Shown piece by piece: positions 7,550 through 60,262 of a stretch of DNA of 64,000 bases. Source of the stretch: Haliotis rubra (Eukaryota); the NCBI RefSeq assembly GCF_003918875.1, contig NW_025767358.1, positions 558,001 to 622,000 on the forward strand, given 5' to 3'. The position numbers and the translations under genes were made by a program. The notes beneath the pieces are model-generated. The model saw nothing but the letters and a program-made list of their open reading frames with translations, ran no database searches and was not told where the DNA came from. The number at the start of each line of letters is the position of its first letter. The stretch's first letter is position 1.

Positions 7550-10500
7550 ATGTGGCTACGGGTTCTGTGTTCCTTGTTTCTCTGCGGAGCGGCGTTCTCC
7601 GACACAACCGTCACCATCTACAACGAGTGGCTCTCCCAGGGTGGACGTATGCATTTTGAAGTTGGAAGATGGAACAAAATTAATGGTCTCACCCAACAGA
7701 GCCTCATTCCAAAGATGAAAGCCGTCGGAGCGGCTGCCGGGCGTTGGGTGAATAGAGATCTGAGGGCCGATCTCTTTCCAAAGGTAAGTATAAAGAAACA
7801 TTCAGCTCCTATGTAGTCATATGATATTGTATTGTATGACTACTGAATCGGTCTATTGTAAAGAGAAGTATATTTGAAAGGGGCAGTGGCGTCGACTAAT
7901 GGTTACGGCGTTTGCTCGTCACGCTGAAGACCCGGGTTCGATTCCTTACAGGCAGCTTGGGTTATCCGGGGTAATAATGGCCTTGATTGTTAGCGCTATG
8001 AGCATACCTAGTTTGGCGCTATATAAATGGACACATTATTATTATTATTATTATTATGGGTACAATGTGCGAAGTCCATTTCAGTCCCGTCGTGTTATTG
8101 CTGGAATATTGCTAAATCACTCACTCACTCATATTTTAAAATGGGAATGAGTGACAGGGTGAGTGGGGCAGCTACAATTTCTTTGTATTGCTAGGGTGCA
8201 GATCGTTGATTATAGTTCAACTACTCAGGGACAGCATAATACTATTCACCGTATCCCTCTGCTACAAAGGTTTATTGGTTCTGGTCTGGTTAAGGTTAAG
8301 ACTTAGCAGCACCGTGGTATGAGAGTCAGAATCGACCTGAGTGGGGCCATAGCCACATCAGCTGGGATCTTTGACAGGCGGTACATTGTATAGAGGACCC
8401 GTAGGCCACGGCACTTCGCGAGACCTTACGTTGTTTAGTACTTCCGATGACAAACACCGTTTCAAACCTTTTCGAATGGGCTCATGGTTGTCAATGACAG
8501 TAAGGAACCGATAATCCTTTTATCCTAATATCTAATTTATGTCTAACAAACTATCATTAAAATATCGACACAGTTCACTATTTGAGGGAGGACTGCAGAG
8601 AAAGGGACAGCTTGGTGTGCGAGAAAGGATGGAGACGGCACAGCACAGGTTAATGAATCGGCACTTTGTCGGCACTTGTGCACGTGCTTCTCTAACACCT
8701 GGCTGTCCCTTTCTCTGCACTCCTCTCTCGTAACAAATAGTGAACTGTGTCAATATTTTAATGATAGTTTGTTAAACAACTTTTTTTAATTTTACGACAT
8801 AAATTCTGCAAACAAATCACAGAGTTGATCTGATATTTTGATTACGATCAGCGTTTCATTGAATATTATATGTTTATTAGTTTTTGAGTTAGATTGCAAT
8901 TCATCGGTCCACTTTTGAGCCAAACGCACTATTTTTATAAGCATGGTTGGACACTTGGGTCTGGTCTGGTAAAGCCATATTTGGCGGTCGCGCAATTTGG
9001 AGTCAGAGTTGGTTCTTGAATGTACGCTTGTCACCTGAAATTTCGTACCGGAAGTAAGCTCGGCCCCGTCTCGCATATCGCAAGTGAGCGGCGAGCCGGG
9101 AACCGGCTAAGTACCGGAAGTAGCGCCTCGCGAGACTTACAGGCCCTATTCGGGCAAACAATAACAGATCAGATTACCATATACAGTCGACCAACGTTGT
9201 GTCGAACTCTGATTACTCGGTTGTCTCGATATAACATCTCGGTCCCGATAAAATCCTTCATAATTTATCATTATTCAAGCTCTTTAACTCGATACGGATG
9301 TCTCCATATTTCGTATATCTCAGTATAATTTCATGGTTCCAACAAGCAAAATTACCCTTTTAACTCGATATTTGCAAAGAAACTCGATATTCACCTTCCT
9401 TTTATGGGCAAATATCCCTCTGAACTGAAGTTGTTTCCGCACGTTTACACACGATGCAGCGCGAATCAAAGAGATGCAGTAGTGTAAACTAATTAGGGCT
9501 CTAATGAAGGTGTCCCTTGTTTGTTATCTAATTAGGATTAATTAAGAAGGAATTAATTAGGGTGAGTGAATGAGTTATCCATACAAATTGTCATCATTCT
9601 TAATTGGTTGGTTTGTTCTTTTACGCCACACTCAGCAATATTCCAGCTACATAGCGGCGGTCTGTAAATAATCTAGTCTGGACCAGACCATCCAGTGATC
9701 AACAGCATGAGCATCGATCTACTCAACTGGAAACCGAGCCTGACCACCCAATCCCGTTAGTGTCCTCTTACGACAAGCATTGGTTACTGAATATCAATAT
9801 TCTAACCCCGACTTTCACGGGTAACAGCCACTGTAAACAGTTCTGATTTGAAGAGGCCATTCAACCATGACTTGAGTAAATACTGGATTGTGTTTGGTTA
9901 ATTAAATTATGCGATCATTCATTGGTCATTGAGGATCCTCAATTCTGTATCTCCCGTGGTGAAAGAATCACTCTAAAAAATGTCCTGCTTGAATGTGTTG
10001 ATTTTTCAATGACAAGGGATAACTATTTCAAAGCGCCGTCTACGAAGGATCTCTTTTAAAAATATTCATTTAATTCTTGATTTTTTAAAAGAATTTCAAT
10101 TGGTTAATAATGTGGTAGTATATTGTTAGATGTATGTATGTTAATGTATAACTGGTATTGTATAACTGAAGTTGTTAGTGAGTGAATCCTGACACAGGGT
10201 CAAAGTATTTGTGAAATCATTGTCTTCCTGAGAGAGGCGTAAGTCCTAAAACATAAGAAATTCTATCATATTAAGTCTACCAGCTATTTAATCGTGCGAT
10301 TTTGGGGGTTTTAAGCGATGGCTAAATTTGAGCACAGGGATGGTGTGAATCCACCTAGGGTGTAAGTTACAGACCAGCTAGTTTCACTTCCATCTGTAAT
10401 AATGGGTTCTTTTCCTGTCCTTCACTGACATTTTTTTTTATAATGCAACTTTATAAATCACGAATGTATAAATTCTTGCTAATCACGATATGGCTGGAAT

Positions 10501-13053
10501 ACTGCAGATGTGACTATATACTATTTAACTCTCTCTCACCCACTCTTCATATGGGGGCTATTGTGTAGCTTAGTGGTTAAAGTGTTCGATCGTCACGTCC
10601 AAGACCCGGGTTCGAATCCCCACATGGGTACCATGTCTGAAGGTCATTTCTGGTGTCTCCGCTGTGAGACTGCTGGAATATTGCTAAAAGTGGTATAAAA
10701 CTAAAACTAACTCTTCATATGACAAATTCCTCTTGTATTATTGTCGTCCTCTTTTCAGTGGCCCCAAAGCTCTAGTCACCACGGGTTTCCAGACCCCAGC
10801 TATCTCCAAGACCATACCATGCAGGCCAAGACATTCGCAAATTATATGATCCAACTGAAGAACTATGGGAATTACATTGACGACATGGTCTGGAACATAG
10901 AAGGTGAGTGAGTGAGTTAATATTTAACGTCATATCGGCAATATCTCAGCCATATTGTGATGAAAACAGGCGATGGACAGTAAAAATAGTAGAGTATCAC
11001 AGATATGAATATACAACTAAACATTTTAATTAAAAAAACACAATGCAATAAAAAACACAGGATACAGATCGCCAACAACGGAAGGTAGATCACCATACTT
11101 GGGGCGATGGGGACTTAAAGTACCGTTTCTGGAACATAGAAGGTTTGAGATGACATTTAAATCATTTCGAGACGTTTATGGGAAAACTGCAATCTGTAGA
11201 GCAGATATATGGAACATGTTTTGAGTTAAGATCATAAGGCTTCAATTATTGCACCGGGGGTTGATTTTGGGAATCTCATTTCGCGCCCCAATCTCTTTCG
11301 GCAATGAACGTATATTTGACGTCTAGTTGCATGTATTTACATCTTCACCAATCCACTCTCTCTCTTTCACACATCAAGTAGTTTATAATGCGATGAGCTT
11401 AATTTAAAATTCTCTGACAGGGAAGGTTGCCCAGTGGTTACAGCTTTGGCTTGTCACGTCGCAGAACCGTGTTCGATTCCCCTCGTGGGTACAATGTGTG
11501 AATCGCACTTCTGGTTATTGCTGGGATATTGCTAAAAGTGGCGTAAAACTAAACTCACTCACTAAGCTGACTGGGACGGTTGTTTCTTTGCAGGTCTTCA
11601 CTGGCCAAGCTGGATTGATAAATCTCAGCATCTTGATAAATTCCCCAACAACCTTGACGCTGCATCAGAGTTTGTGTCCCTAATGATTCAGAGTGCCAAG
11701 GACTACACAGGAGGACACCTTCCCTCTATCTTTGAACCTCTCAATGAACCTGATTGGGTCGAAAAGTACATCCCCCCAGAAACGTGTACCGATTTCCACA
11801 AGGCCGTCGCCGACAAAGTGAGAAAGAAGTTTGGAATCAAAGTTAGCGGACCATCGTACACTAGTATGGCCTTACGACAAGCAGATGAAAATGATTTTGC
11901 CTTCTGGAAGAGAACTGCAAAGTTTCTTGACATGTCTCTTGATCACTTGGACTTTTTCTCTTTCCATTCCTACAACTACCTGACGGACGTATCAGGTAAA
12001 AGCTACTTGGGCATCAACGAAGCTCGTCTTTTTGCTTCTCTTGACATGGTGGAGAATTATGCTCATATCAAGAAAGGAAAAAGTGTTCAGTTAGTTAACA
12101 CTGAATTTGGATTAGGCTTAGATAACCTTCAAGGCGTTGGCCCAGATTTTGAAAATGGAATGACGGATTTTCAGACAATTTATCAAGCAAACGGTTTCTT
12201 GTGTTCTTTCTTTAACCTGAGAGAGGTGATGGACAGAGCTACAATCTTCCTCCTCTCTAATGAACAATACCCAGGTCATACTTCCCTTCGCAATTCCTTA
12301 TTTACGATGGATGGCCATGCCCTTAATGTGACAAAATACTTCACTTTTTGGAAAAACCTTGTTTATGATCACAGGTTTCTCCGATTCTCAAGTGAACTCA
12401 ATGGGAAGGAGAGAACAGTTTCACCGCTTGCCCTTGCAAACCCCCACACCAAAGAGCTGGTAGTACTTCTCCACAACTTTGGCAATAAATTTGAGAATGT
12501 AAAACTGGACTTCCCCAATAACTGGCTCGACCCTTCTACAGGCGAAGAAACATGTGTTGTATTAAAAGATGGTTATCCAGCTATTAATGCTGATTTCAAG
12601 TTTGACAGGCATAAACTGCATGGCACTGTTGGTCTCCCTGCAACATCAACCTGCTTCTACAAGTTTAAAACCAACTACAACTTCAACGGAATACGCACAG
12701 ACAATCAGCGCACATACTACGGCAGGAACATGCAAATCAAAATCATTAATGGACGTGCACAGACAACCGTCACTCTACCGAGCACTGGTTATCATGAGGG
12801 TCATCTTAGAGTGGGCATCAGCCGAGGGAAGAATTTCAATACCAAACCGAAATCCGTTGTGTTCAATGGTCAGACTTTGTCTTCAAGTTACATGCTGTAT
12901 GATGCAATGGGCACGCAAGGGAAAACAAACTGGAACGTGTGGGAATTCGCGGTCCCTCCGTCAAAAATCACCAAATCCAATTCCGTCACCTTATCCTTTG
13001 ATGGAAACGATGGATACGTGACCTCCGTTGGGCTCGCTGTTGGAAAAATTTAG
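7550..13053 (+). CDS. Secreted GH86-like beta-porphyranase/agarase, copy 1 (3 exons, 612 aa)
   Basis: Exons 7550-7783, 10759-10903, 11594-13053 with GT-AG introns (phases 0 and 1) splice into an open 1839-nt frame. Signal peptide MWLRVLCSLFLCGAAFS. Motifs FEPLNEP (E178, 11746-48), LDFFSFHSY, VNTEFG (E297, 12103-05) and C-terminal LRVGISR...NSVTLSFDGNDGYVTSVGL match my recollection of bacterial GH86 porphyranases. Confidence 0.88.
7880..8131 (+). mobile_element. tRNA-SINE family C interrupted by an (ATT)n-tailed L2-like 3' fragment (~7949-8056)
   Basis: SINE head to 7948 and tail from 8056 flank a segment ending GCGCTATATAAAT...(ATT)n. Confidence 0.65.
8540..8931. mobile_element. Foldback element remnant: ~85-bp inverted arms (8544-8776) plus a terminus of the 25394 MITE family
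   Basis: TAACAAACTATCATTAAAATAT.GACACAGTTCACTATTTG recurs in inverted orientation at ~8734-8775. Confidence 0.65.
9606..9823 (-). mobile_element. Retroposon family A copy (intron 1 of copy 1)
   Basis: Aligns to 1-245 with an internal deletion. Confidence 0.8.
9930..10545 (+). mobile_element. Nimb-LINE 3' fragment (ORF2 C-terminus + 3' UTR)
   Basis: Translates EDPQFCIS..ERITLKNVLLECVDFSMTRDNYFK, homologous to ORF 26151..26351. Confidence 0.7.
10553..10712 (+). mobile_element. tRNA-SINE family C
   Basis: TAGCTTAGTGG A box and GGTTCGAATCC B box. Confidence 0.75.
10906..11127 (-). mobile_element. Nimb-LINE 3' UTR fragment inserted at the exon 2 splice donor of copy 1
   Basis: 17-bp TSD TCTGGAACATAGAAGGT at 10889-10905 and 11128-11144. 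Confidence 0.85.
11420..11563 (+). mobile_element. tRNA-SINE family C, diverged (intron 2 of copy 1)
   Basis: B box GTTCGATTCC, shared body and tail. Confidence 0.7.
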
Positions 13054-13055
13054 TA

Positions 13056-13061
13056 AATAAA
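13056..13061 (+). terminator. Polyadenylation signal, copy 1
   Basis: AATAAA 2 nt after the stop; equivalent hexamer conserved in all copies. Confidence 0.6.
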
Positions 13062-14832: not shown

Positions 14833-15180
14833 GGTGAGGTGAGGTGAAATTGGGTTTAACGTCGTGCTTGAGAATATTACGCTCATATGACGACGTGCAT
14901 GAATGTGTATGTGTATGTGTGGCTTCTTGTACTAGCCCAGACTTAAGCTGGTTTTATAGTGCTAGCCCACTGAGATACGATGCCGCAGTGAAGCATGAAT
15001 ACCCCACTCAGACACAGTATACTGACCCCGAGTCGTCCTTGTTGTACCCATTAATGTCGAGCGCCAGGGACCAACAAGTACCATATTTTAACGTCTATTG
15101 GTATGACGCGGTCGGGGATCGAACCCGCGACCTTCCGCTCTCCGGGCGGACGCTCTAACCACTACACCACGGAGGCGGTC
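14833..15180 (-). mobile_element. tRNA-headed SINE, probably V-SINE superfamily
   Basis: Minus strand TGGTGTAGTGG A box, GGTTCGATCCC B box, then GTCATACCAATAGACGTTAAAATATGGTAC resembling the V-domain; (CACCT)n tail. Confidence 0.7.
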
Positions 15181-17030: not shown

Positions 17031-17814
17031 TGCTGTTTTGTATATTATGTAAATGCATATACGCTTATCTGATGTAAGTAGTATTTGCTCTGTACCTATT
17101 TCATATTTTTTACCTTTTTAATTCGGCCTCCCATTTATATTTCCCTTATTACTCAGTTGTTGTTGTTGTTTGTTCTTGGGGTTGGTTTTTTTTTTTTGTG
17201 TTCTTTTTGTTGTTTGTTTTTGTTTCTTTTGTTTTTGGGGGGTTGGTTTGTTTTGGGTAGTAACATTACTCTTTCAAAATTTCTATTTTATGCTCCCCCT
17301 CATTGCTTAATAAGTGTACTACCCCGTCGCCGAAACACCTTAGTTGTGCGCGCAACGTTAAATAAAGCAAATGACAACACCATTGGCCACACACTACTAA
17401 ATGTAGAGGCAGCTTGTAAATAACCGAGTCCATGCGTTACACGCTATAGCATTGAAGGGAATGATGCATGCCGTCCACTCAATAATTCATTCTGTCGACT
17501 ATCACNNNNNNNNNNNNNNNNNNNNNNNNNNNNNNNNNNNNNNNNNNNNNNNNNNNNNNNNNNNNNNNNNNNNNNNNNNNNNNNNNNNNNNNNNNNNNNN
17601 NNNNNNNNNNNNNNNNNNNNNNNNNNNNNNNNNNNNNNNNNACATGACCAGTGTCAATGCAATATTTGTGACCTATATCAGGATCCATGTCACAGTTCTT
17701 TGAAGTGCATCTGAAATTTGTAAGGTCATTTCATATACAATAGTACTTAAAGTTTTGGCGTTTAAAGATTTTACTTGTTTTCAAATTAAGTACTAAGGTG
17801 TCTTTTCTAGCTTC

Positions 17815-20924: not shown

Positions 20925-23900
20925 ATGTTTCTACAAGTTCTGAACACTTTGTTGCTGTTGGAATCGGCGTTTTCTGACACAACTGTCACAATCTACAACG
21001 AGTGGCTCTCCCAGGGTGGACGGGTCAATTATGAAGTTGAACGATGGAACAACGTAAATGGGCTCACCCAACTGAGCCTAATTCCAAGTATGAAATCTAT
21101 CGGAGCGGTTCCTGGGCGTTGGGTAAACAGAGACCTCAGAGATAATCTCTTTGTAAATGTACGTATGAAGTAAAAACATCTTTCATACAAAAATATAGTT
21201 CGTGATTGATGTGATTCATGATTCATGTCCTTGTTTGCCTATTGAATCGGTATATTGTAAGGAGCAGTCTTTTTACGCAGCTTAAATGGGTTCGGAGTGA
21301 CAGTGTGTGTTCTATACTGGACAAAATAAGTTAGGGATATTGGTATTTTTATGATTGATATTTTATCAGTGTGTCAATGAATAAATAGATCATTATTAAT
21401 AATTTCAAAATTTACATATATCCCTAACTATTTTTGTCCAGTATATTTTCGCAAGGTGCAGATAGTTGCTCATAGTTCAGTTATGTATTTACTGGTTCAG
21501 ATTGAATTATTCAAAGTGACCCATTGGTGCAGGTGTTTGATAGTTCTGGTCCAAGCAGAATTTAGGGTACTGCTTAGTAAAGATGACCGTGAAGATCCGG
21601 GTTAGAATATTGGCCTTCAGTAACCCTTCTTGTCGTAAGAGGTGACTAACGGGATCGGGTGGTCAGACTCACTGACTTGGTTGACAGATGTCATCGTATC
21701 CCAATTGCGTAGATCGATGCTCATGATTTTGATCACTGGATTGTCTGGTCCATACTTGATTATTTACAGACCGCCGCCATATAGCTGGAATATTGCTGAG
21801 TATAACAAACCAACCAACCAACCAACCAATCCCTCTTCGATACTCATTCGCTATCATGGTCTCCCCACACAATCGCAGACCTCCTAAAATCACTTTTCTT
21901 AGGTCTTTGGCGGAGTTCAATGTTAGAAAAGCAGAAACGACTGCAAATGGGACAAACTAACCAATTCTGTCGTAAGTTCCAACAACTTCTTCGTTTGAAC
22001 TGGTCCTGCTTCCATGATCAGTTGTGTCAGTAGAAATTTCATTTGTAAGGAGGTAAGGAAAATATCTGAATGTAAGATTTCCAATTGAGAAATAATTGTA
22101 TTTACTAAAAAATCAGAAATGTAACACATCTCTAAAATGTCAATGGGAAATAGAAAATAAACTGACTCTGTTGCATATTTTCTGTTGCTCTGGTGTAACT
22201 GACCCCAAGAATATATGACACTATTTATGGATTGCATCTTATCTTTTATTCAATCTGGTGAAAGAGCAAGAATAATCTCTGAAACGTCGTGAGACAGAAG
22301 TTCTTATTCATAAAACGTGTCATTTATCCATGTTCATCCAACTTCTACACGCCTTGGAAGAACTTAGCTGACTCCAAGTATAAAACTGATCAAAGCGACC
22401 CATGGCACAACATAAAGGAATACACCATTATACTGTTTTTCCTTGAACACCCATTTACAATTGTATCATTAAAATGTTCATTTCTTTTACTTTTGTGAAA
22501 AATATTGTCCTTCAGTGGCTAAAAATGCAATTTAGATGAATGCCATAACAAACGTAACTGTTTATCTTTTAATTATTCACAGAGAAAACTGTTGGTTTAA
22601 TCTTATATTGTTTTATTCAGTGGCCTCAAAGCCCTAGTCACCATGGCTATCCGGACCCCACCTATCTACAGAACCAACCACTGCAGAGACGGACATTTTT
22701 GACGTATCTCAAACAATTGCAAGACTATGGGAATTACATCGCCAATATGGCCTGGGAAATGAAAGGTTTGTTCTTTTAATCCTCTCAAAGAGTGACTGAG
22801 TGAAATAAACTTTAACGTCACCACTGTTTCAGCCATACAGTGACGATAAACGTTTTGCATTCATAATAAATGCAAGTTGTTAAAAATCCAGTCATCAAAG
22901 GATTGACAATGAGTTGAGTTTTACATATGGTGTTTAAACCTGGCATGTAAATCTGAAACCTTTGAAGACAATATAAAAACAGGCTATAGGTCGTCAACAA
23001 GTGGAAGATCACGACACTAGGGACCATGGGGACTTACAGCGCGTTTTCCTATCTGCATGGACCATAGTTGAATTTGCATCATCCCTTCAAATATGACTAA
23101 TTTAGCCCCAAAATAAAACGAATACATATTCTATGAATACAAGTGTGTAGAAGTACATGGGAAAAGTATGCCATTAACTAATACATATAACTACTAACAG
23201 AACAGACGTGAAACAAATTTTGCGGTGTTTCAAGCTGAACTGAGAGCACTCTTTTCTCATTGGTAGGTAGTCCAATTTCCTTCTTACCTCTCTGAAAGCA
23301 GGTTACTCATAATCATTTATAACAACAGTTGAAAATGGCAGTAACTTAACCTGTCTACACAAACTTATTAACGCTTAAAGTGGGTGAACACCCAATGAAT
23401 ATTTCTTTCGTAATATTTCTCTTACCGTATATGCTGGTTGTTTACAGGTCTCTCCTGGCCCAGCTGGATAGATAAGTCTCAGCATCAAGACAAATTCCCA
23501 AACGATGTTGACGCTGCATCCGAGTTTGTCTCACTGATGGTTCAGAGCTGCAAGAACTACACATCAGGACGTCTTCCTTACATATTTGAAGTCATCAATG
23601 AACCTGATTGGGATGAAAAGTATATTGATCCACAAACCAATATAGATTACCACAGGGCCGTCGCCGACAAACTGAAATCAAGATTTGGAATGAAAGTGGC
23701 TGGACCATCATTCACTAGTATGGCCTTACGACTAGCAGATGAAAATAACTTCATCTTCTGGAAGAAAATTGCTAACTTTATGGACATGTCTCTTGATCAC
23801 TTGGACTTTTTCTCTTTCCATTCCTACAATCATATTTTCAATGCATCAAGCGAATCCTACTATGGTATCAACGAAGACCGTTTGTTTGCCTCTCTTGACA

Positions 23901-24913
23901 TGGTTGAGAATTATTCTCATCTCAAGAAAGGAAAAAGTGTTCAATTAGTAAACACTGAATTTGGAGTAGGTTTACTTACCATGGGCATTGCGCCCGATTT
24001 TGAAAATGGACTGATAGACTTTGAGACAATTTATCAAGCAAACGGTTTCATGTTTTCTTTCCTTAACCTCAGGGAGTTTATGGACAGAGCTACAGTGTAT
24101 CTCCTCGCAAATGAACAATACCCTGGCCATACTGCCCTTCGGAATTCCTTATTCACAAAAGATGGTCATCCACTTAATGCGACCAAATTCTTTCTATTTT
24201 GGAAAAACTTTATTGATGATCAAAAGTTTCTCCGAGTCTCTAGTCAATACGATGGAGAGGAGAAAATAGTCTCACCACTTGCACTAGCAAATCCTCACAC
24301 CAATGAGATGGTAGTTCTTCTCCACAACTTTGGCAGTGAATTTGAGAATGTAAAACTGGACTTCCAAAACAACTGGATCAATCCTTCTTCGGGTGAAGCG
24401 ACATGTATTCTGTTCGAAAAGGGTAAGCCAGCTGTTCATGCAGATTACCATTTCAACATATCCGGGGTTAATGGCACCGTCGGTCTTAATGGATCATCAA
24501 CATGCTTCTACAAGTTTCAAACCAACTACATCTTTAACAGATTACACACAGATAATCAGAACACATACTATGGCAGGGACATGCTCATTCCCATCAGCAA
24601 TGAACGTGCACAGACAACCATCAGTGTACCGAGCTCTGGCTACCATGAGGCCAATCTTAGAGTAGGAATTAGTCGTGGCATGAGAGACAATACAAAACCT
24701 AAGGCAGTTGTATTCAATGGTCAGACGTTGTCGTCAAGCTATATGTTGTTTGATTCTATGAAGACAACAAAAATGAGGACAACAACATGGAACGTGTGGG
24801 AGTTCATGGTACCAGCATCGCTGGTGAAAACAACCAACACCGTCAGCATGACCTTTGATGGGGACGGTGGCAACGTGACTTCCGTTGCTCTTGTTGCAGG
24901 AAAACTTGAGTAA
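20925..24913 (+). CDS. Secreted GH86-like beta-porphyranase/agarase, copy 2 (3 exons, 614 aa)
   Basis: Exons 20925-21158, 22621-22765, 23448-24913, same exon 1/2 sizes and intron phases as copy 1, open frame. Signal peptide, FEVINEP and VNTEFG present. An in-frame ATG at 20904 is an alternative start. Confidence 0.88.
21315..21443. mobile_element. Tc1/mariner-type MITE
   Basis: TIR TACTGGACAAAA..AGTTAGGGATAT, TA flanks. Confidence 0.75.
21586..21830 (+). mobile_element. Retroposon family A copy ((AACC)n tail)
   Basis: Reverse complement of 1-245. Confidence 0.8.
22792..23135 (-). mobile_element. Nimb-LINE 3' UTR fragment (intron 2 of copy 2)
   Basis: Shared motifs GAAGATCAC...CTAGGGACCATGGGGACTTACAG. 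Confidence 0.65.
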
Positions 24914-24918: not shown

Positions 24919-25027
24919 TGTTCTTAAGAATACTTTGCTTGTGTTGATTCCATCCCCACACGAGGAATGATATACAGTGAGAAAGTGCCACTTTGTCAGA
25001 TGATACAGATAGTAATAATTCCGGTTT

Positions 25028-25236
25028 TGTTGTTGTTGTTCTTAAACGCCATATCAGCTATATGGCGGTGGTCTGTAAATAATCGAGTCTGGACCAGACA
25101 ACCTAGAAATTGACATCATGAGCATCAATCTGCGCAACTGGGAACCGATGACATGCATCAACCAACCCAGCGTGCCTGACCACCTGATCCCGCTAGTGGC
25201 CTCTTACAAGTATGGGTTACTGAAAACCTATTCTAG
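25028..25236 (-). mobile_element. Retroposon family A copy
   Basis: Diverged alignment to 1-245. Confidence 0.75.
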
Positions 25237-35500: not shown

Positions 35501-36279
35501 CCCTTCGGAATTCCCTATTTACCACTGATGGTCATCCCCTTGAGCCAACCAAATTCTTCCTGTTTTGGAAAAACTTTATCAATATTCAAAAGTTTCTCCG
35601 GGTATCTAGTCAACACAATGGACAGGAGAGAACAGTTTCACCACTTGCCCTTGCAAACCCCCACACCAAAGAGATGGTAGTTCTCCTCCACAATTTTGGC
35701 AATAAATCAGAGAATGTAAAACTGGACTTCCCCAACAACTGGATCAATCCTTCTTCAGGTGAGCAGACATGTATCCTGTTCGAAAAGGGTAAGACAGCCG
35801 TTCATAGCGATAGCCATTTTGACAGGTCTAAGCTTCATGGCAGTGTCGCACTTCCTGCAACATCAACCTGCTTCTACAAGTTTAAAACCAACTACATCTT
35901 TAGCAAAATACACTCAGATAATCAGAATACATACTATGGCAAGAACATGCTCATCCCCATCAGCAACGGACGTGCACAGACAACTATCGGTGTACCGAGC
36001 TCTGGCTACCATGAGGCTCATCTTAGAGTGGGAATTAGTCGAGGCAGGACTCATACTACAAAACCTAAGACAGTTGTGTTTAATGGTCACACTTTGTCTT
36101 CTAGCTACATGTTATTTGATGCTATGAAAACTCAAAGCAAAAGGAAAACAAACTGGAACGTATGGGAGTTCGTGGTCCCTGAATCACTGGTGAAAACAAC
36201 CAACACCGTCAGCATGACATTTGATGGGGACGGTGGCAGCGTGACATCCGTTGCTCTCGTTGCAGGAAAACTTCAGTGA
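29520..36279 (+). CDS. Secreted GH86-like beta-porphyranase/agarase, copy 3 (3 exons, 614 aa)
   Basis: Exons 29520-29753, 34380-34524, 34814-36279, GT-AG introns, open frame. Signal peptide MFLPVLCTLLLWGSAFS, FEVINEP and VNTEYG present. Confidence 0.88.
30256..30586 (-). mobile_element. Second V-SINE-like copy (intron 1 of copy 3)
   Basis: Aligns end to end with 14833-15180. Confidence 0.7.
31690..32115 (-). mobile_element. L2/CR1-group LINE RT fragment
   Basis: GVPQGLVLGPVLFTLY and YADDT motifs. Confidence 0.75.
33245..33455 (-). mobile_element. L2/CR1-group LINE RT fragment (upstream part of the same RT)
   Basis: QSAYRPKHSTETALLKVLNDL...LVLLDFWAAFDTID. Confidence 0.75.
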
Positions 36280-43017: not shown

Positions 43018-43345
43018 TTAATGAAAGGTCAAGCTATTGGTAACACTATTTCTTAAAATTTGTAAAATCTTCGTTTATGCAAGTGAATGTTTTATAAACT
43101 TTCTTATCAGTATTGAAAAACACATCAGGCCTTTGAAATGTCATCATTACGTTTATTTAACGTCCGATACATACTGTTACAAATGGCATAGTTTTTATTC
43201 AAATTGTCAATATGGAAATCCACCTGCCACGTAATGTCAATAATTTGCACTTGCAAGTCGGTGTATCCATGGAAAGTGAAGGACAATACACATGCATTGG
43301 TGCTTTTTCACTGTTCAGGTACCTGTTTGAAATCGCAGCTTAAAA

Positions 43346-45025: not shown

Positions 45026-48000
45026 ATGTTTCCTCAGGTTCTTTTGACTCTGGGTTTGTGGGGGTCAGCGTTTTCTGACACAACCGTCACAATCTACAAC
45101 GAGTGGCTTTCCCAGGGTGGACGTGTCAATTATGAAGTTGAACGATGGAACAACGTTAATGCACTCACCCAAATGAACCTGATTCCAAAGATGAAATCTA
45201 TCGGAGCGGTTTCTGGGCGTTGAGTAAACAGAGACCTGAGAAAAGGTCTCTTTGCAAATGTACGTATGTAAACACCATCTTCAATGCTAAACGATTATGA
45301 ACGTGATATGATTCATGCATGATTTGTGTGTCCAGTGAATCTGTATATTGTCAGGAGCAGTATTTGTACATATGTTTAATGGAAATGAGACAATTAGAAT
45401 GTATGACGGTATAAGACTATATGTTTTCATGGTGCAGATCATTGCTCACAATACATACTAGACAATGCAACTTATGTTTTGTTAAATTATAAAATGTCCG
45501 AACGAGTCATGCCGCCATGACCATCAGCTCAAAAGTATAGATCAATTCATTTGGAAGCAGGTTAGGACAATATCTGAACATGAGATTTTCAATTGAAAAT
45601 AACTGGCTCTTTTTTTTAGAACATTAACGTTAGAAATAATATCATGACAATATACACTCAGTGCCATTATTGAAGGGTCATGTGTCTTTTTTTTGCATTG
45701 CTACGAATCAATTTCATATTATGAAATATAAGTAATGAGAAGTCAATACTGTTTAAAACCCTGTTGACAGAAGGCACCATAGAACACATTAGACTACGCA
45801 CATGTCTCATTATTGAGAAGTTTAAGCTATAGAGTGTTTCAAAAACATGATCATTTTGATAAATTCCGAAAATACTGTCAATGTCTGTATCGTGGAAACG
45901 CAGCATTTTGCCCTGTATTCCACGAGAAAGTGCGACTTCCCATGCACAGATTTAGGCTATAAATGTCAACTGTAGTCTCACCCTGACATCATGGTTTCTG
46001 ATACGAAATGAGACGTTTCCTGACGGTAGCAGAGAGAGGTCAAGCAAGCTGGTCACAGTCAACGACAAGCTGCAAATCACTTCAATGTGAGTCAAAGTGT
46101 CATTTGGTTGCAAAGGTTTCAAGCCACGGGATCGATGGAATATGCGAGAAGACCAGGCCGACCTAGAGTTACCAGTGCAAGGCAAGACAGATATATGGGA
46201 AACGTCGCTTTACGTTACCGATTCGTGACCTCCAGTGACCTTCAGACAGAACATTATAATGTTCATGGTGTCAGGATAAGCAGGAACACCATTCGACGCC
46301 GATTACGTGCCCACTCAGTGGGCTCCGTTCAAGGCGACCAGCAGTCCGTCCACCACTTCTGCAACGTCACAGACATGCATGTTTAGCCTGGATCAGTCAC
46401 GGTCGTTGGAATCATCGTCAATGGTCGAACGTGATCTTTACAGATGAACGCCGGTTTAATTTGTCTATTAATGATGGTCATTGGAGAATATTCTGCAGAA
46501 GAAGTGAACGGTTCACTGATGCTACAGTTGTCACACACAATAGGTTTGGTGGCGGGTCAGTCATGGGTTGGGCCGGTATCATGGCTACAGGAAGAAAGAT
46601 CCCAGCTTAATATTATTGATGGAAATTTGACTGGTCAGTGNNNNNNNNNNNNNNNNNNNNNNNNNNNNNNNNNNNNNNNNNNNNNNNNNNNNNNNNNNNN
46701 NNNNNNNNNNNNNNNNNNNNNNNNNNNNNNNNNNNNNNNNNNNNNNNNNNNNNNNNNNNNNNNNNNNNNNNNNNNNNNNNNNNNNNNNNNNNNNNNNNNN
46801 NNNNNNNNNNNNNNNNNNNNNNNNNNNNTTTTTGCAAGCTACGCATGGATTTTATGGTCGTGACCCTCTTCTACAGGACGATAATGCCAGACCTCACAGA
46901 CACAACTGCAGTCACTGATTATCTTCAGCAACAGGGTGTGGAACGGGTGGACTGGCCGGCATGTTCACCAGACCTTAATCCAATCGAGCATGCATGGGAT
47001 GAACTTGGCAGACGTGTTTACAGACGTCACCCTGCTCCACAAGAGTGTCTTCGGAGAGTTCATGTGCAAGAATGGGAGGCTATTCTTTATGAACTTGATG
47101 AGAAGCATGAGGTATCGGTGTAACTCTGTCCAGGACCAGAGAGGCGGCCACATGGTCATGGACTCTATTGTTGCGACTTTCAGTGTTGTGGGTATCCCTT
47201 TATTAGATGTGCGTGAAGATGCAGTCCTGATCCTTTCCTCACAGCACAGCACCGAACACTCTCCAGACTGTCTTTTCTTTCTATAATCTTGTCACAGCAT
47301 ACTCCACTTTGCATTATATTACCTTATTGCTACATAACCCTTCAATAATGGCACTGAGTATATAAAAAAGTAACATATTATTAATGAGGAAAAGAAGGAA
47401 TACATGTTAGGTACGTATCTGCTATTGCTGTGGTACAGCTCACCTCAAAGTATGATCAAAGCCACAAACTGTGCACTTTGAATGAGTCTGGCAGAAAACC
47501 ACTTTTTTCATTCGATCAGTAAACAGTAATATATTTTCCTTTGCTGTATGTTTTTGCCATTCAAAGGCTGCATATTTATTTAAAAGGACGCCGTAACAAA
47601 TGTACCTGTTTATCTTTTAATTCTTCACATGGAACTATGCGATATTATTTTTTCATTCAGTGGACCGAAAACCCTCATCACCATGGTTATCCGGACCCCA
47701 CCTATCTCCAGGACCGTTCTCTCATGCGACAGACCTTTCTAACATATGTGCACCAATTAGAAAACTTTGGGCCTCACACCGCAAACATGGTCTGGGAAAT
47801 GAAAGGTTTCTCCAGTCATTTAATCATTTTCAAAAGTCAAACAGGTGTCAAACACTGTGTTTAAAGTTGAACTAACAGCAGCATCATTCATCGGTCGGTA
47901 TTAGGAGTCCAATGTTGATCCTCACGTCCCTGAAAGCATATTACACGTGATTTATCATGTAACCCACAGTCAACAACATAACCTACACACACTCATGTAC

Positions 48001-49549
48001 GTTTAAAGTAGTAACATTCGTTGAATTTGCTTAGCCTAACTTTTCACTTAATTTCACCTACAATAGATAATGCTTTTTTACAGGTCAGGCCTGGCCCGGC
48101 TGGATCGATAAGTCTCATCATCATGGCGGATTCCCAAACAATGTTGACGCTGCATCAGAGATGGTGTCACTGATGGTTCAGAGTTGCAAAGACTACACAG
48201 GAGGACGCCTTCCTTACATATTTGAAGTCATCAATGAACCTGACTGGTACGAAGATATTATTGATCCACAAACGAATATAAATTACCACAGGGCTGTCGC
48301 CGACAAACTGAAATCAAGATTTGGAATGAAAGTTGCCGGACCGTCGTACACCAGTATGGCATTACGACAAACAGATGAAAACAACTTCAGCTCTTGGAAG
48401 AGAACTGCCAACTTTATGGACATGTCTCTTGATCACTTGGACTTTTTCTCTTTCCATTCCTACAACCGTCTGAATGATGCATCGGGTCACACCTACTCTG
48501 GCATCAACGAAGCTCGTCTGTTTTCTTCTCTTGACATGGTGGAGAATTATTCTCATATCAAGAAAGGAAAAAGCGTTCAGTTAGTTAACACTGAATATGG
48601 ATTAGATTTACTTAACCTAGGCCTCAGTCCCAGTTTTGAGAATGCAATGACAGATTTTCAGACAATATATCAAGCAAATGGTTTCATGTTTTCTTTCCTT
48701 AACCTGAGAGAGTTCATGGACAGAGCTACAATATATCTCCTCGCAAACGAGCAATACGCAGGTCACACTTCCCTTCGGAATTCCTTATTTACTGATGATG
48801 GTCATCCCCTTGAGCCAACCAAATTCTTCCTGTTTTGGAAAAACTTCATAAATATTCAAAAGTTTCTACGGGTCTCTAGTCAACACGATGGACAGGAGAG
48901 AATAGTTTCACCACTTGCCCTTGCAAACCCCCACACCAAAGAATTGGTAGTTCTTCTCCACAACTTTGGCACAAAAGATGAGAATGTTAAACTGGATTTC
49001 CCCAACAACTGGATCAACCCTTCTTCAGGTGAACAGACATGTATTCTGTTCGAAAAGGGTAAGACAGCTGTTCATCCCAATAACCATTTTGACAGGTCTA
49101 AGCTTCATGGCAGTGTCAGTCTTCCTGCAACATCAACCTGCTTCTACAAGTTTCAAACGAACTTCAACTTTGCTGGACTACACACAGATAATCAAAACAC
49201 ATATTATGGCAAGGGCATGATAATCCCCATCAACAACGGACATGCTCAGACAACTATCGGTGTACCGAGCTCTGGCTACCACGAGGCCCATCTTAGAGTG
49301 GGAATCAGTCGCGGCAAGTATACTACTACAAAACCTAAGACAATTGTGTTCAATGGTCGCACTTTGTCTTCAAGCTACATGCTGTTTGATTCTATGAAGA
49401 CATCAAACAAGAGGACAACAACATGGAACGTGTGGGAGTTCATGGTACCAGCATCGCTGGTGAAAACAACTAACACCGTCAGCATGACCTTTGATGGGAA
49501 TGGTGGCAGCGTGACATCGGTTGCACTCGTTGCAGGAAAACTTCAGTGA
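45026..49549 (+). pseudogene. GH86-like porphyranase copy 4, premature stop W66* (null allele, young pseudogene or base error)
   Basis: Exons 45026-45259, 47661-47805, 48084-49549. TGA at 45221-45223 where the other four copies have TGG (GRWVN). Splice sites, catalytic motifs and the rest of the frame are intact. Confidence 0.78.
45655..47360 (+). mobile_element. Tc1-like DNA transposon (defective) in intron 1 of copy 4
   Basis: TIRs (C/T)ACTCAGTGCCATTATTGAAGGG at 45655-77 and 47338-60, TA on both flanks; FTDE, QDDNARPH and WPACSPDLNPIEHAWDELGRR motifs; spans an N-gap. Confidence 0.87.
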
Positions 49550-56332: not shown

Positions 56333-56359
56333 ATTCTTATCTGAAAAATGTTTCAAAGA

Positions 56360-56459: not shown

Positions 56460-57298
56460 ATGTTGTTACTGCTTCTGTGCTCCGTGTTGTGTGGGGCAGC
56501 GTTGGCTGACACAACCGTCGCAATCTACAACGAGTGGCTCTCCCAGGGTGGACGTGTCAATTATGAAGTTGAACGATGGAACAACGTTAATGGACTCACC
56601 CAATACTACCTTGTTCCAAATATGAAATCTATCGGAGCTGTTCCTGGGCGTTGGGTGAACAGAGACCTCAGAAAAGATCTCTTTGCAAATGTACGTATGA
56701 AGTAAAGCCATCTTCAATGCAAAAAGGATTTTGGACTTGATGTGATATGATTCGTACATGATTTGTATGCCTAGCGAATCAGTATATTGTAAGGAGCATT
56801 ATTTCTGTCTTAAAATCAGAATGAGACAGATGGAATGTATGAGCTGTTGTATCTGTATTTTTCACGGTGCAGTTCAGTGCTCATAATCCAAACACGTCCA
56901 TGCCAGCGTTATTTTATATATGTTAAAATAGCCAAGTCTGTTGTAACTGCTAACAACGTAATTATTTGTGGAAACCTCCTCTGAACGAGTCTGGCCGCCA
57001 TGACTGTCAGCTCAGATGGGTCAATGCAGATGAATTCCTTGGAAAGGAGTTAAGGACAGTATCTGAATAAGTGCTGTTAAAAAAATAACCGTCTTTTTCT
57101 GAACATTTAAGATATATAACAAAGGAATAATTTGTCAATGGAAAAACGAAAATGATTACCTGTGTGCTGCCTATTTTGCGTTGGTGTGGTACAGCTGATC
57201 TCAAGTGCAAATCCGATCTAAGCCACATCACATCACATGGTCAAAGAGTGTGCCATGAAATCACTTTTTCTGTTGATTCGTGGGGCGGTGGGGTAGCC

Positions 57299-57717
57299 TG
57301 ATTCAGAGGTCACTGAAGAATATATTTTCTTCAACTTCCTAATAAATAGGAAACAATATACGAAATTTCAAGGACATACAAAGAAATCAAACACAATAGA
57401 ATAATTTGAATTTACTTTTAGATAATATTACGTTGTCATGTTTCATATATTGAAACATAATGTATAAACACAAATAATTATACATCCAAGCTCGAATAGA
57501 GTAGACATAATTTAACGTACTAACTTAAAGCTTACTGAATTGTAACTAGTTATTTTCCATAATCTAAAGTTGATAATGTTACCTAATCGAATATAAAGTG
57601 ATAAGTCGCCCCTTTGCATCGAATATATATACATGTCAATGTTATTACAATAATGGGGGCGGTGGGGTAGCCTAGTGGTTAAAGCGTTGGCTCGTCACGC
57701 CGAAGACCCGGGTTCGA
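57299..57717 (+). repeat. Identical copy of 40624-41042
   Basis: No mismatch seen over ~419 bp. Confidence 0.9.
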
Positions 57718-57820
57718 TTCCCCACATGGGTACAATGTGTGAAGCTCATTTCTGGTGTCCCCCGCCGTGATATTGCTGGAATATTGCTAAAAGCGTCGTA
57801 AAACCAAACTCACTCACTCG
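57656..57820 (+). mobile_element. tRNA-SINE family C, full length
   Basis: Near-identical to 40981-41146. Confidence 0.85.
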
Positions 57821-58314
57821 CTCTGTTGATTCGCTTACAATGTCAATGACATGTCGAAACTTTTCAGAGTTTATTGTCTTTCAACGGCAGCAAACTCATT
57901 TAAAGTGATGCTGTACAAGACGTAAGTGTTTATCCTCTAATTCTTCATAGAGACAACCCATCACTTTACTACCATATTGATATATTTTATTCAGTGGACT
58001 GAAAGCCCAAGTCACCATGGTTATCCGGATCCCACCTATCTCCAGGACCATTCTCTCCAGAGAAGGACATTTCTAACATACCTGCGACAATTGCAAAACT
58101 ACGGGCCTCACACCACAAACATGGTGTGGGAAATGAAAGGTTTGAAAAGTCACATAATCATTTTTTAAAGTTTATAAACATATTTTTTACGTTTTTGTTT
58201 CAGTCATAACTGAAGACAGGAAAGGTGTCAAACGTATTTCACTGTGTTTAAAGTTGAACTGAGAATATTCACATTTCACTGGTCGGTATTGGGAGTCCCA
58301 CTCTGGTCTTTAAG

Positions 58315-58695
58315 TGTGTGAAGGAGTTAAGATTTTATGTCACATCGGCAATATTTCAGCCACATCGTGACTAAATCATGTTATAGATTTATAATAACTA
58401 AAAGTAAATTCTAAACTAGTAATTAAATCTAAAATACCTTAACTATAGAAGACAATACAACATAAAACCGTCCTGTAGGTCGCCAACAACTAAAGGTAGA
58501 TCACCATACTAGGGACCGTAGGGACCAGTACTTTTGCTACCTATCTGATCTTTAATGTTACCGACAGTTGAAATGCAACGGGACTTAATACTCCACAGTT
58601 TTGGGGTTTTTTATTTATAAATTTACAACTTTCCTAGTCACGATATGGCAGAAACACTGCCGATGTGACTTTAAATTTTAACTGACTCACTCACT
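58315..58695. mobile_element. Two oppositely oriented Nimb-LINE 3' fragments (intron 2 of copy 5)
   Basis: Minus copy ~58315-58545, plus-strand tail ~58620-58695. Confidence 0.6.
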
Positions 58696-60256
58696 AATAC
58701 ATCCACACTCATTTGCGTTTCATAACTGAACACCCGATAAATATGCTGGAAATGAAAATTTCATTTGCAATATATTTTGCATCCCTTCAGGTTTGGCATG
58801 GCCGGGCTGGATAGATAAGTCTCAGCATAAAGATGTATTCCCAAACAATGTTGACGCTGCATCCGAGTTTGTGTCACTGATGGTTCAGGCTTGTAAGGAC
58901 TACACAGCAGGACGCCTTCCTTACATATTTGAAGTAATCAATGAACCTGACTGGGATGAAAAGTATATTGATCCACCAACGAATATAAATTACCATTAGG
59001 GCTGTCGCCGACAAACTGAAATCAAGATTTGGAATGAAAGTTGCCGGACCATCCTATACGAGTGAAGCCTTTACGACTAGCAGATGAAAATAACTTTAGC
59101 TTGTGGAAGAGAACTGCTAACTTTATGGACATGTCTCTTGATCACTTGGACTTTTTTCTTTTCATTCCTACAACCATATGTTCAATACGTCTAGTAAATC
59201 CTACTATGGCATCAATGAAGATCGTCTGTTTGCTTCCCTTGACATGGTAGAGAATTACTCTCATATCAAGAAAGGAAAAAGTGTTCAATTAGTCAACACT
59301 GAATTTGGAGTAGGCTTACTTTCCCTGGGTGTGGCGAACGATTTTGAAAATCCACTGATAGACTTTGAGACAATTTATCAGGCGAACGGTTTCATGTTTT
59401 CTTTCCTAAACCTGAGAGAGTTCATGGACAGAGCTACAATATATCTCCTCGCAAATGAGCAATACCCAGGTCATACTTCTCTTCGGAATTCCTTATTTAC
59501 AACTGACGGTCATAGCCTTGAGCCAACCAAATTCTTCCTGTTCTGGAAAAACTTTATTGATGATCAAAAGTTTCTCCGGGTTTCTAGTCAACACGATGGA
59601 CAGGAGAAAATAGTGTCACCACTTGCTCTTGCAAACCCCCACAACAAAGAGATAGTAGTTCTTCTCCACAACTTTGGCAACAAATTTGAGAACGTAAAAC
59701 TGGACTTTCCAAACAACTGGCTTAACCCTTCTACAGGTGAACAGACATGTATTCTGTTCGAAAAGGGTAAGCCAGCTGTTCATCCCAATACCCATTTCGA
59801 CATATCTAAGCTTAATGGCACCGTCGGTCTGCCTGGATCATCAACATGCTTCTACAAATTTCAAACCAACTACATCTTTAACAGATTACAAACAGATAAT
59901 CAAAACACATACTATGGCAAGGAAATGCTCGTCCCCATTAGCAATGGACGTGCGAAGACAACCATCAGTGTACCGAGCTCTGGCTACCATGAGGCTCATC
60001 TTAGAGTTGGAATTAGCCGTGGCATGAGAGACAATACAAAACCTAAGGCAGTTGTGTTCAATGGTCGCACTTTGTCTCCAAGCTACATGCTGTTTGATTC
60101 CATGAAGAATGCAAAAAGGAGGACTACAACATGGAACGTATGGGAGTTCTTGGTACCTGAAACACTGATAAAAACAACCAACACCGTCAGCATGACCTTT
60201 GATGGGGACGGTGGCAACGTGACATCCGTTGCACTTGTTGCAGGAAAACTGCAGTG

Positions 60257-60262
60257 AATAAA
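60257..60262 (+). terminator. Polyadenylation signal overlapping stop, copy 5
   Basis: TGAATAAA. Confidence 0.6.

What the first reader, a model, noticed from the sequence alone, without database searches (positions are those of the whole stretch)
7550..60257. Animal-encoded tandem array of five GH86-like beta-porphyranase/agarase genes: a candidate endogenous red-seaweed galactan digestion system
Seen: five co-oriented paralogs with signal peptides, two GT-AG introns at identical positions, polyA signals and host retroposons inside introns, so this is not bacterial contamination. Knowledge: the NEP acid/base, DFFSFH strand, LDMVENYS helix, TE[F/Y]G nucleophile (119 aa after the acid/base) and the C-terminal LRVGISR...FNG...WEF.VP...NTVS.TF.G.GG.VTSV beta-sandwich follow the architecture I recall for bacterial GH86 porphyranases such as Bacteroides plebeius BpGH86A. 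Characterised porphyranases and GH86 agarases are, to my knowledge, bacterial. Inference: an algivorous animal makes its own porphyran/agar hydrolases and has amplified them for dosage or substrate range.
Basis: partly seen in the sequence, partly recalled or inferred. Interest (0 to 1): 0.95.

Follow-up and report, generated by a model that had tools for sequence, protein, structure and literature searches.

The report
Abalone's own GH86 seaweed-galactanase gene array
The blacklip abalone genome itself, not its gut bacteria, carries a row of intron-containing genes for secreted enzymes of family GH86, whose solved and characterised members are bacterial enzymes that cut red-seaweed agar and porphyran; the family is old in molluscs and hugely multiplied in abalone, but no enzyme activity has been measured.

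Summary
The window (Haliotis rubra, contig C2468:558001-622000) holds five co-oriented three-exon paralogs. Their GT-AG introns (phase 0, phase 1) sit at identical positions. Genes 1-3 are intact. Gene 4 has a TGA at a conserved Trp codon. Gene 5 has three 1-nt indels, but a 99%-identical second assembly of that locus lacks them, so they are probably assembly errors. The N gaps lie outside coding sequence.

GH86 membership is well supported. A mollusc-only profile matches only GH86 structures in the PDB (E 2e-41 to 4e-29). An AlphaFold model (pLDDT 91.5) matches them at TM 0.74-0.82, against 0.5 or less for other clan GH-A folds. Both catalytic glutamates are conserved.

Chiton and mussel genes share both intron positions and phases, so the family predates the split of mollusc classes. 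A bacterial origin is inferred, not shown. No GH117 partner was found, so "complete digestion system" is unsupported. Substrate and expression of these exact copies are untested.

RefSeq already auto-names relatives "beta-porphyranase A-like", but I found no paper describing them. The scan noted sister arrays elsewhere in this genome.

The parts
7550..13053 (+). Gene 1 (RefSeq LOC124257191): exons 7550-7783, 10759-10903, 11594-13053; 612 aa, intact. Acid/base Glu codon 11746-11748, nucleophile Glu codon 12103-12105.
   Evidence: Identical to P0015 over its full length. The AlphaFold model of this protein has pLDDT 91.5.
20925..24913 (+). Gene 2: exons 20925-21158, 22621-22765, 23448-24913; 614 aa, intact. 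Glu codons 23600-23602 and 23957-23959.
   Evidence: An RNA-type contig about 91% identical to this gene joins 21158 to 22621 and 22763 to 23446, exactly at these exon borders.
29520..36279 (+). Gene 3 (RefSeq LOC124257188): exons 29520-29753, 34380-34524, 34814-36279; 614 aa, intact. Glu codons 34966-34968 and 35323-35325.
   Evidence: Residues 121-614 are identical to P0001.
45026..49549 (+). Gene 4: exons 45026-45259, 47661-47805, 48084-49549. Otherwise a 614-codon open frame, but it has a TGA at 45221-45223 in place of the nearly invariant Trp66.
   Evidence: No near-identical second copy exists in the assembly to check against; the best is 90%. dN/dS against g3 is 0.29, so the lesion is recent, or it is an error or a null allele.
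56460..60257 (+). Gene 5: exons 56460-56690, 57995-58139, 58791-60257. As assembled, the frame is broken by an extra T at 58996, an extra T at 59070 and a missing C at 59156.
   Evidence: A second assembly of the same locus (C2249:2500-7000, 98.9% identical over 4.2 kb) lacks all three indels and carries a different 1-nt insertion near 59602. The breaks are therefore probably consensus errors.
46087..47123 (+). Tc1/mariner-type transposase remnant inside intron 1 of gene 4, interrupted by the N gap 46641-46828.
   Evidence: Pfam HTH_32 and HTH_Tnp_Tc3_2 left of the gap, DDE_3 right of it.
26528..27196 (-). Reverse-transcriptase fragment of a retroelement, lying between genes 2 and 3.
   Evidence: Pfam RVT_1, E 3e-9.
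17506..17641 (.). Assembly gap between genes 1 and 2. It touches no exon.

Best explanation
These are five neighbouring Haliotis rubra nuclear genes for secreted, retaining glycoside hydrolases of family GH86. Each protein has a (beta/alpha)8 barrel followed by two beta-sandwich domains. Glu178 in the NEP motif serves as acid/base and Glu297 in TE[F/Y]G as nucleophile. They form one stretch of a tandem array of about 36 copies. The array belongs to a mollusc-wide gene family with at least 88 loci in this genome. That family already had its two introns before chitons, bivalves and gastropods diverged, and it most likely entered an early mollusc from a bacterium. The most likely job is endo-cleavage of beta-1,4 links in agar-type sulfated galactans of red algae in the gut lumen, with the long-diverged paralogs covering differently substituted substrates. 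Shown: gene structure, family membership, fold, conserved catalytic residues, purifying selection, copy number, and intron conservation across three mollusc classes. Inferred: secretion, bacterial origin, substrate, and digestive role.
For: Gene models and splice sites come, and the g1 model equals RefSeq P0015. One exon-3 translation matches PDB 5TA1 at E 1.3e-13 across the catalytic and C-terminal parts, with NEP aligned to NEP and TEF aligned to the residue mutated in the E322Q entry 5TA0. PMC5849685 calls that mutant the nucleophile mutant. A mollusc-only profile matches only GH86 chains: 5TA1 2.3e-41, 8H97 1.4e-40 and 4AW7 3.8e-29, with nothing else at E 0.01 or better. The AlphaFold2 model has pLDDT 91.5 and pTM 0.91. 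Its seven best Foldseek hits are all GH86 at TM 0.74-0.82, followed by a drop to TM 0.5 or less. E174, N177, E178, H251 and D277 are invariant, and E297 is at least 90% conserved, across 55 mollusc and bacterial-type sequences. dN/dS is 0.22-0.38 for all ten pairs. The genome has at least 88 matches, and all copies on C2468 and C2249 are on the + strand. The two contigs overlap by 15.2 kb. Mollusc sequences form one clade with SH-aLRT 100. Intron 1 is phase 0 and intron 2 phase 1 at homologous codons in chiton and Mytilus and in deep H. rubra paralogs. The nearest non-mollusc relative lies among bacterial genes. RNA-type contigs cover exons only, and one is spliced at the predicted borders.
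Against: No enzyme activity, tissue expression or protein evidence is available. The spliced contig is only about 91% identical, so it comes from a paralog or a related species, and the runs are only guessed to be RNA. Identity to characterised GH86 enzymes is 17-20%. The loop that sets agarose versus porphyran preference in bacteria (the -2 subsite, PMC5849685) aligns with gaps, so the substrate cannot be read off. Filter-feeding Mytilus and Pinctada carry the family, which does not fit a purely macroalgal role. No GH117 was detected in the genome. The tree is unrooted: molluscs sit on one side of a long branch from all sampled bacterial-type sequences, so neither a donor nor the direction of transfer is shown. 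Of the non-mollusc sequences, bacterial origin was checked for only two (P0093 by context, P0102 by its Vibrio name). Two of the five copies do not read through as assembled.
Confidence: 0.6

Rival explanations
1. They are true GH86 enzymes, but their substrate is not agar or porphyran. It could be another beta-linked, possibly sulfated glycan, such as carrageenan-like or funoran-like galactans, microalgal or biofilm exopolysaccharides, or a molluscan glycan. The role could be digestive or could be in mucus or matrix turnover.
For: The mollusc clade sits on a long branch (about 1.4 substitutions per site) apart from all sampled bacterial-type GH86, at 17-20% identity. The family occurs in the filter feeders Mytilus and Pinctada. 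The loop corresponding to BuGH86 T82 is two residues longer and reads GRWxNRD in molluscs. No GH117 was found. RefSeq names vary between porphyranase, agarase and funoran hydrolase.
Against: The largest expansion is in abalone, which graze macroalgae. The -1 subsite catalytic framework is conserved.
Confidence: 0.28
2. The array is largely decaying: it is a graveyard of duplicated genes with little present function.
For: g4 has a stop codon and g5 has frameshifts as assembled. Several other genomic copies contain stops.
Against: Three of the five copies are intact. dN/dS is 0.22-0.38 even for g4 and g5. The g5 indels are absent from a second assembly of the same locus. Most of the 88 matches have no stops. 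Orthologous subclades persist across four Haliotis species.
Confidence: 0.05
3. They are catalytically inactive, lectin-like or immune glycan-binding proteins derived from GH86.
For: No direct evidence. This is considered only because large tandem families in molluscs are often immune-related.
Against: Both catalytic glutamates and the surrounding invariant residues are kept in all five copies and in nearly all 55 aligned sequences.
Confidence: 0.04
4. This is bacterial contamination or a misassembly.
For: The closest non-mollusc relative examined by genomic context is bacterial.
Against: There are spliceosomal GT-AG introns at conserved positions and host transposons within and between the genes. 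GC content is about 0.40, like the flanks. The contig is 627 kb. The same intron positions occur in chiton and mussel chromosomes. Exons 1 and 2 carry GH86-homologous sequence that is split by the introns.
Confidence: 0.01

Closest known systems
BuGH86, the endo-beta-agarase of Bacteroides uniformis NP1 (PDB 5TA1, 5TA5, and 5TA0 for E322Q)
   Same: It is the best sequence and structure match. It has the same three-part architecture, a (beta/alpha)8 barrel plus two Ig-like domains (PMC5849685). The acid/base NEP motif and the nucleophile Glu align.
   Different: It is bacterial, intronless, a single gene in a polysaccharide utilisation locus alongside GH16, GH117, GH2 and sulfatases, and predicted to be periplasmic. 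Identity to the abalone protein is only 17-18%. The abalone genes have introns and a eukaryote-style signal peptide, stand in huge tandem arrays, and have no detectable GH117 partner.
BpGH86A, the beta-porphyranase of Bacteroides plebeius (PDB 4AW7)
   Same: Same family and fold (TM 0.74-0.80). The Pfam BPA_C domain, defined on this protein, is the one Pfam hit above threshold in the abalone proteins.
   Different: It scores lower than the two agarases (3.8e-29 against about 1e-41), so the RefSeq-style name 'porphyranase A-like' carries no evidence about substrate. I could not map its sulfate-pocket residues (F77, S326; PMC5849685) with confidence.
Aga86A_Wa, a GH86 agarase (PDB 8H97)
   Same: Full-length match at E 1.4e-40 and TM 0.81.
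   Different: It is a longer chain, 742 residues, and 19% identical.
Host-encoded algal- and plant-polysaccharide enzymes of molluscs and other animals, such as abalone alginate lyase and cellulase, and horizontally acquired GH45 or GH5 enzymes of nematodes and beetles (from my own knowledge, not tested here)
   Same: The concept is the same: an animal's own secreted digestive carbohydrate-active enzyme, often of microbial ancestry and often tandemly duplicated.
   Different: Those enzymes belong to other families and act on other substrates. I found no paper reporting an animal GH86. The copy number here is unusually high.

Membership tests
Glycoside hydrolase family 86 (CAZy GH86) | Significant sequence similarity to established GH86 members over the catalytic module, and better than to any other GH family | tested here: met
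   A single exon-3 translation matches 5TA1 at E 1.3e-13. A mollusc-only profile matches only 5TA1, 5TA0, 8H97 and 4AW7 (E 2.3e-41 to 3.8e-29), with nothing from GH39 or GH5 at E 0.01 or better.
Glycoside hydrolase family 86 (CAZy GH86) | A (beta/alpha)8 barrel followed by two beta-sandwich (Ig-like) domains | tested here: met
   The AlphaFold2 model has pLDDT 91.5. The top seven PDB folds are all GH86 at TM 0.74-0.82 over about 650 aligned columns, and the next folds are at TM 0.5 or less. Pfam BPA_C is above its cutoff. Pfam Porphyrn_cat_1 is seen only below its cutoff, and only in divergent family members. Caveat: the model's alignment included bacterial-type GH86 sequences, though no templates were used.
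Glycoside hydrolase family 86 (CAZy GH86) | Clan GH-A catalytic pair: the acid/base Glu in NEP and the nucleophile Glu | tested here: met
   E178 is invariant and E297 is at least 90% conserved in 55 sequences. E297 aligns with the residue changed in BuGH86 E322Q. Both codons are present in all five window genes.
Glycoside hydrolase family 86 (CAZy GH86) | Endo-beta-1,4 hydrolysis of agarose, porphyran or funoran | not testable with these tools
   This needs recombinant protein and substrate assays.
Glycoside hydrolase family 86 (CAZy GH86) | Assignment by CAZy or dbCAN models | not tested
   No dbCAN or CAZy library was on hand. NCBIfam gave no hit.
Expressed, functional animal gene | An uninterrupted reading frame with canonical splice sites | tested here: inconclusive
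   Met for g1-g3. g4 has a TGA. g5 is broken as assembled, but a second assembly of that locus lacks those breaks.
Expressed, functional animal gene | Purifying selection | tested here: met
   Pairwise dN/dS is 0.22-0.38 with dS 0.32-0.65.
Expressed, functional animal gene | Spliced transcripts of these copies | tested here: inconclusive
   A spliced contig at the exact exon borders, and exon-only coverage in three runs, were seen. However, the contig is about 91% identical, and the runs are only guessed to be RNA. RefSeq models match g1 and g3.
Gene horizontally acquired from bacteria | Restricted to one animal lineage against a broad bacterial background | tested here: inconclusive
   All named animal hits are molluscs: Haliotis, Mytilus, Pinctada and Liolophura. 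The other relatives have bacterial-type GH86 domain architecture; two were confirmed bacterial. The searches have limited reach and do not prove absence in other phyla.
Gene horizontally acquired from bacteria | The animal clade nested within a bacterial clade on a rooted tree | tested here: inconclusive
   Molluscs are one clade (SH-aLRT 100), but it lies opposite all 31 sampled non-mollusc sequences on an unrooted tree with long branches. No donor was identified.
Complete agarolytic pathway in the host | A GH117 alpha-1,3-L-neoagarobiose hydrolase alongside the endo-agarase | tested here: not met
   A PDB-verified GH117 from a bacterial GH86 locus found nothing in the genome at E 0.001 or better. 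The GH86 of the same locus found 69 loci. This used one query only, so the result is 'not found with this query'.

The most novel reading that the evidence does not exclude
Molluscs acquired a GH86 galactanase before their classes diverged, around the Cambrian. Abalone then diversified it into roughly ninety genes. Red-algal agar-type galactans would therefore be depolymerised mainly by the animal's own enzymes, each paralog tuned to a different sulfation or methylation pattern, rather than by its gut microbiota. This would be the first endogenous agarolytic or porphyranolytic capacity in any animal.
Probability: 0.35. Interest if true: 0.85.

Novelty: new variant of a known kind. Interest (0 to 1): 0.68.

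Why it matters
Papers on abalone digestion that I could read attribute breakdown of red-algal polysaccharides to gut bacteria (PMC5870069). Reviews list agarases and GH86 porphyranases only from microbes (PMC5874223). A host-encoded GH86 family that is conserved and massively amplified would change that picture for an important aquaculture and fishery animal. It would add a very old example of a carbohydrate-active enzyme family shared between bacteria and one animal phylum, dated by shared introns. It would also offer a large natural library of eukaryotic galactanases for making seaweed oligosaccharides. The question can be tested directly with recombinant enzymes and with digestive-gland transcriptomes.

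Tried and rejected
**Contamination.** Rejected on introns, transposons and contig size.

**GH39, GH5 or GH79 instead of GH86.** Pfam gives weak GH39 and GH5 hits, at or below cutoff, in divergent members. Profile and fold searches put GH86 far ahead.

**An intronless basal paralog.** A 615-aa open frame at C696 suggested one. tblastn shows it has the usual three exons.

**g5 as a real pseudogene.** Not supported, once the same locus was found assembled twice with different private indels.

**PolyA signals as evidence.** The hexamers are not consistently placed.

**Reading substrate from BuGH86/BpGH86A specificity residues.** T82 and Q138 map onto the alignment with the expected +3 offset. The paper's M396 does not fall on a Met in my count of the aligned chain, and the loops align with gaps. 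I abandoned this approach.

**Searches that gave nothing.**
- NCBIfam gave no hit.
- The term 'BuGH86' matched no paper.
- One six-term literature search was too loose to be informative.
- Pfam on the ORFs at 1673-5549, 16494-16997, 33212-33451, 8792-9076 and 14844-15155 gave nothing.

**Reads.** Only contigs were available, only one read-laying run was allowed, and no run on record as RNA holds the stretch. I could not check g4's stop codon or measure expression.

**N gaps.** I filled none. Locus L013, fetched to compare contig ends, spans the place of the window's third N run and contains no N. I did not print or use those letters.

Full report
**What is there.**
The window is Haliotis rubra DNA. 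One translated exon is 100% identical to RefSeq LOC124257188, and the genome tool places the window at C2468:558001-622000.

Six-frame ORFs and tblastn show five long open exons of about 1.46 kb on the + strand. Each is preceded by a short exon that encodes a hydrophobic N-terminus. Intron-to-intron comparison found a third, 145-nt exon in every copy.

Reading the junctions gives GT..AG introns in all ten cases. Intron 1 is phase 0, after the codon for N or K in '...LFxN'. Intron 2 is phase 1, inside the Gly codon of '...MKG|L.WP'.

The resulting proteins are 612-614 residues long. My gene 1 model is identical over its full length to RefSeq protein P0015, and gene 3 residues 121-614 are identical to P0001.

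**State of the five copies and the N gaps.**
- Genes 1-3 are intact.
- Gene 4 has a TGA at 45221-45223, where all relatives have a nearly invariant Trp. The assembly holds no near-identical second copy to compare; the best is 90%.
- Gene 5 has an extra T at 58996, an extra T at 59070 and a missing C at 59156.

The last 15.2 kb of contig C2468 align end to end with the first 15.2 kb of contig C2249 (95.9% identity). Within that overlap the whole gene 5 locus is 98.9% identical, with 9 mismatches but 39 gap positions over 4.2 kb.

That second copy lacks all three indels and carries a different 1-nt insertion further on. Only two substitutions separate the two copies in exon 3. Private single-base indels at different sites in two assemblies of one locus look like consensus errors. 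I therefore do not accept gene 5 as a proven pseudogene.

dN/dS is 0.22-0.38 for every pair, including genes 4 and 5.

The three N runs lie between genes 1 and 2, inside intron 1 of gene 4 (within a Tc1/mariner remnant), and downstream of gene 5. None touches an exon, and I filled none.

**Family assignment.**
Pfam finds only the BPA_C domain, 'beta porphyranase A C-terminal', above its cutoff. That would be thin evidence on its own.

Three further results are stronger:
- One exon-3 translation already matches the solved chains 5TA1 and 5TA0 at E 1e-13 across residues 46-485.
- A profile built only from 24 mollusc proteins matches exactly four distinct PDB sequences at E 0.01 or better, and all four are GH86: BuGH86 wild type (5TA1, 2.3e-41), its E322Q mutant (5TA0, 1e-40), Aga86A_Wa (8H97, 1.4e-40) and BpGH86A (4AW7, 3.8e-29). 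The alignments cover residues 62-610.
- The AlphaFold2 model of gene 1's protein is confident (pLDDT 91.5, pTM 0.91). Its seven best Foldseek hits are those same GH86 entries at TM 0.74-0.82. GH30, GH79, GH39 and GH51 folds follow at TM 0.5 or less.

E178 (NEP) is invariant and E297 (TE[F/Y]G) is at least 90% conserved across 55 mollusc and bacterial-type sequences. E297 aligns with the residue that differs between 5TA1 and 5TA0. The authors describe that change as the E322Q nucleophile mutant (PMC5849685).

Exons 1 and 2 also align with the bacterial N-terminal region; for example, the '..EDP.R.GYPDP' motif lies in exon 2. The introns therefore split GH86-homologous sequence.

**Scale.**
The large exon has at least 88 matches in the genome, with 194 first-look candidates. 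Contig C2468 carries about eight more copies outside the window (seven upstream, one at the contig's end). C2249 carries about 23 beyond the overlap, and all are on the + strand.

If the two contigs join, as their terminal overlap suggests, the window shows five of about 36 tandem copies spread over about 530 kb. The alternative, that the overlap reflects two haplotypes, is not excluded.

**Age and origin.**
Named relatives come only from molluscs: four Haliotis species, five Mytilus species, Pinctada imbricata and the chiton Liolophura sinensis.

An exhaustive HMMER scan of 1.84 billion representatives gives only 202 hits. There is a sharp step from mollusc proteins (E below 1e-30) to proteins of 24-29% identity with the canonical GH86 domain pair. 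Of these, one lies among bacterial transporter and regulator genes, and another is a Vibrio protein with a CBM6 module.

In a maximum-likelihood tree, the 24 mollusc sequences form one clade (SH-aLRT 100) on a long stem. Three deep Haliotis lineages branch outside a group that contains the chiton, the bivalves and the main Haliotis expansion.

Exact GT-AG solutions that reproduce the annotated chiton and Mytilus edulis proteins place intron 1 (phase 0) and intron 2 (phase 1) at the codons homologous to the abalone introns. The deep H. rubra paralogs show the same three exons.

The family, with its introns and probably several paralogs, therefore predates the split of Polyplacophora, Bivalvia and Gastropoda.

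Transfer from a bacterium into an early mollusc is the simplest reading of the distribution. However, the tree is unrooted and no donor clade emerges, so this step is inference.

**Function.**
Secretion is inferred from the N-terminal hydrophobic segment and a small-residue cleavage motif.

The chemistry, retaining hydrolysis of a beta-glycosidic bond by the Glu pair, follows from family membership.

The substrate is the weak point. But identity is only about 20%. The -2 subsite loops that separate agarase from porphyranase in bacteria do not align cleanly. The family is also present in filter feeders.

The neighbouring copies are old (dS 0.32-0.65). Gene 2 is closer to an H. asinina protein (89%) than to its neighbours (68-84%). 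This favours retained functional diversity over simple dosage.

A GH117 enzyme is needed to split neoagarobiose (PMC5849685). One taken from a bacterial GH86 locus and verified against the PDB found nothing in the abalone genome. The GH86 next to it found 69 loci, with a best E of 7e-28. The host thus appears to own the endo-acting step but not, by this test, the whole pathway.

**Expression.**
No run on record as RNA holds the stretch.

Three runs guessed to be RNA cover the exons of gene 2 and repeats, but not the unique intron bins. A DNA run covers everything. One 440-nt contig joins 21158 to 22621 and 22763 to 23446, which are the predicted borders. At about 91% identity it comes from a paralog or a sister species. 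It shows that family members are spliced as modelled, not that these five copies are expressed.

**Novelty.**
RefSeq's automatic names already point at the family: 'beta-porphyranase A-like', 'beta-agarase-like' and 'funoran endo-beta-hydrolase-like'. This scan has also flagged sister arrays on other pieces of the same genome.

I found no paper that reports or discusses an animal GH86. A 2026 compendium of metazoan gene transfers does not mention abalone, agarase or porphyranase in its main text. Work on abalone digestion assigns red-algal polysaccharide breakdown to bacteria.

I rate this as a new variant of a known kind: a canonical enzyme family in an unexpected kingdom, with introns, ancient within a phylum, and amplified to an unusual degree.

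Noticed in passing
window 1673-5549 (+): A run of long ORFs (134, 392 and 192 aa) upstream of gene 1 has no Pfam match. It is possibly an unclassified mobile element.
   Followed up: partly
window 21304-21907 and 24928-25200: These stretches in gene 2's intron 1 and just downstream of gene 2 reach summed depths of up to about 15 million in the DNA run, so they are very high-copy host repeats. They also appear in the RNA-type runs.
   Followed up: no
window 43204-43557 (+) and 60882-61142 (-): Further mobile-element fragments: a CENP-B/Tc-type HTH domain upstream of gene 4, and a zf-RVT domain downstream of gene 5.
   Followed up: partly
G000:C2468:611693-626874 versus G000:C2249:1-15250: The end of one contig and the start of another align over 15.2 kb at 95.9% identity, with differences dominated by indels. 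Either the assembler failed to join them or they are two haplotypes. It also shows that single-base indel errors are common in this assembly, so stops and frameshifts in other copies should be treated with care.
   Followed up: partly
P0090 (Mytilus coruscus 'CHST1', 419 aa) and P0091 (Mytilus edulis 'DDE-1 domain-containing', 575 aa): These gene models have a GH86 piece attached to a differently named protein: one carries a sulfotransferase name, the other a transposase domain. They are probably fused or broken annotations next to GH86 genes in mussels.
   Followed up: no
P0096 cluster (879 aa), member P0244: A GH86-like protein (E 4.7e-16) has a cluster member labelled as coming from a Picozoa single-cell genome in EukProt. 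It may be bacterial contamination of that dataset or another eukaryotic occurrence.
   Followed up: no
L017 (metagenome contig, 21 kb): This bacterial-type locus has two GH86 genes, a GH3, a GH117, a sulfatase and proteins with type IX secretion tails: a typical agar/porphyran utilisation locus. I used it only as a source of control queries.
   Followed up: partly
window 60436-60657: This N run in the window corresponds to a place where the fetched genome locus L013 holds no N. I did not read or use those letters.
   Followed up: no
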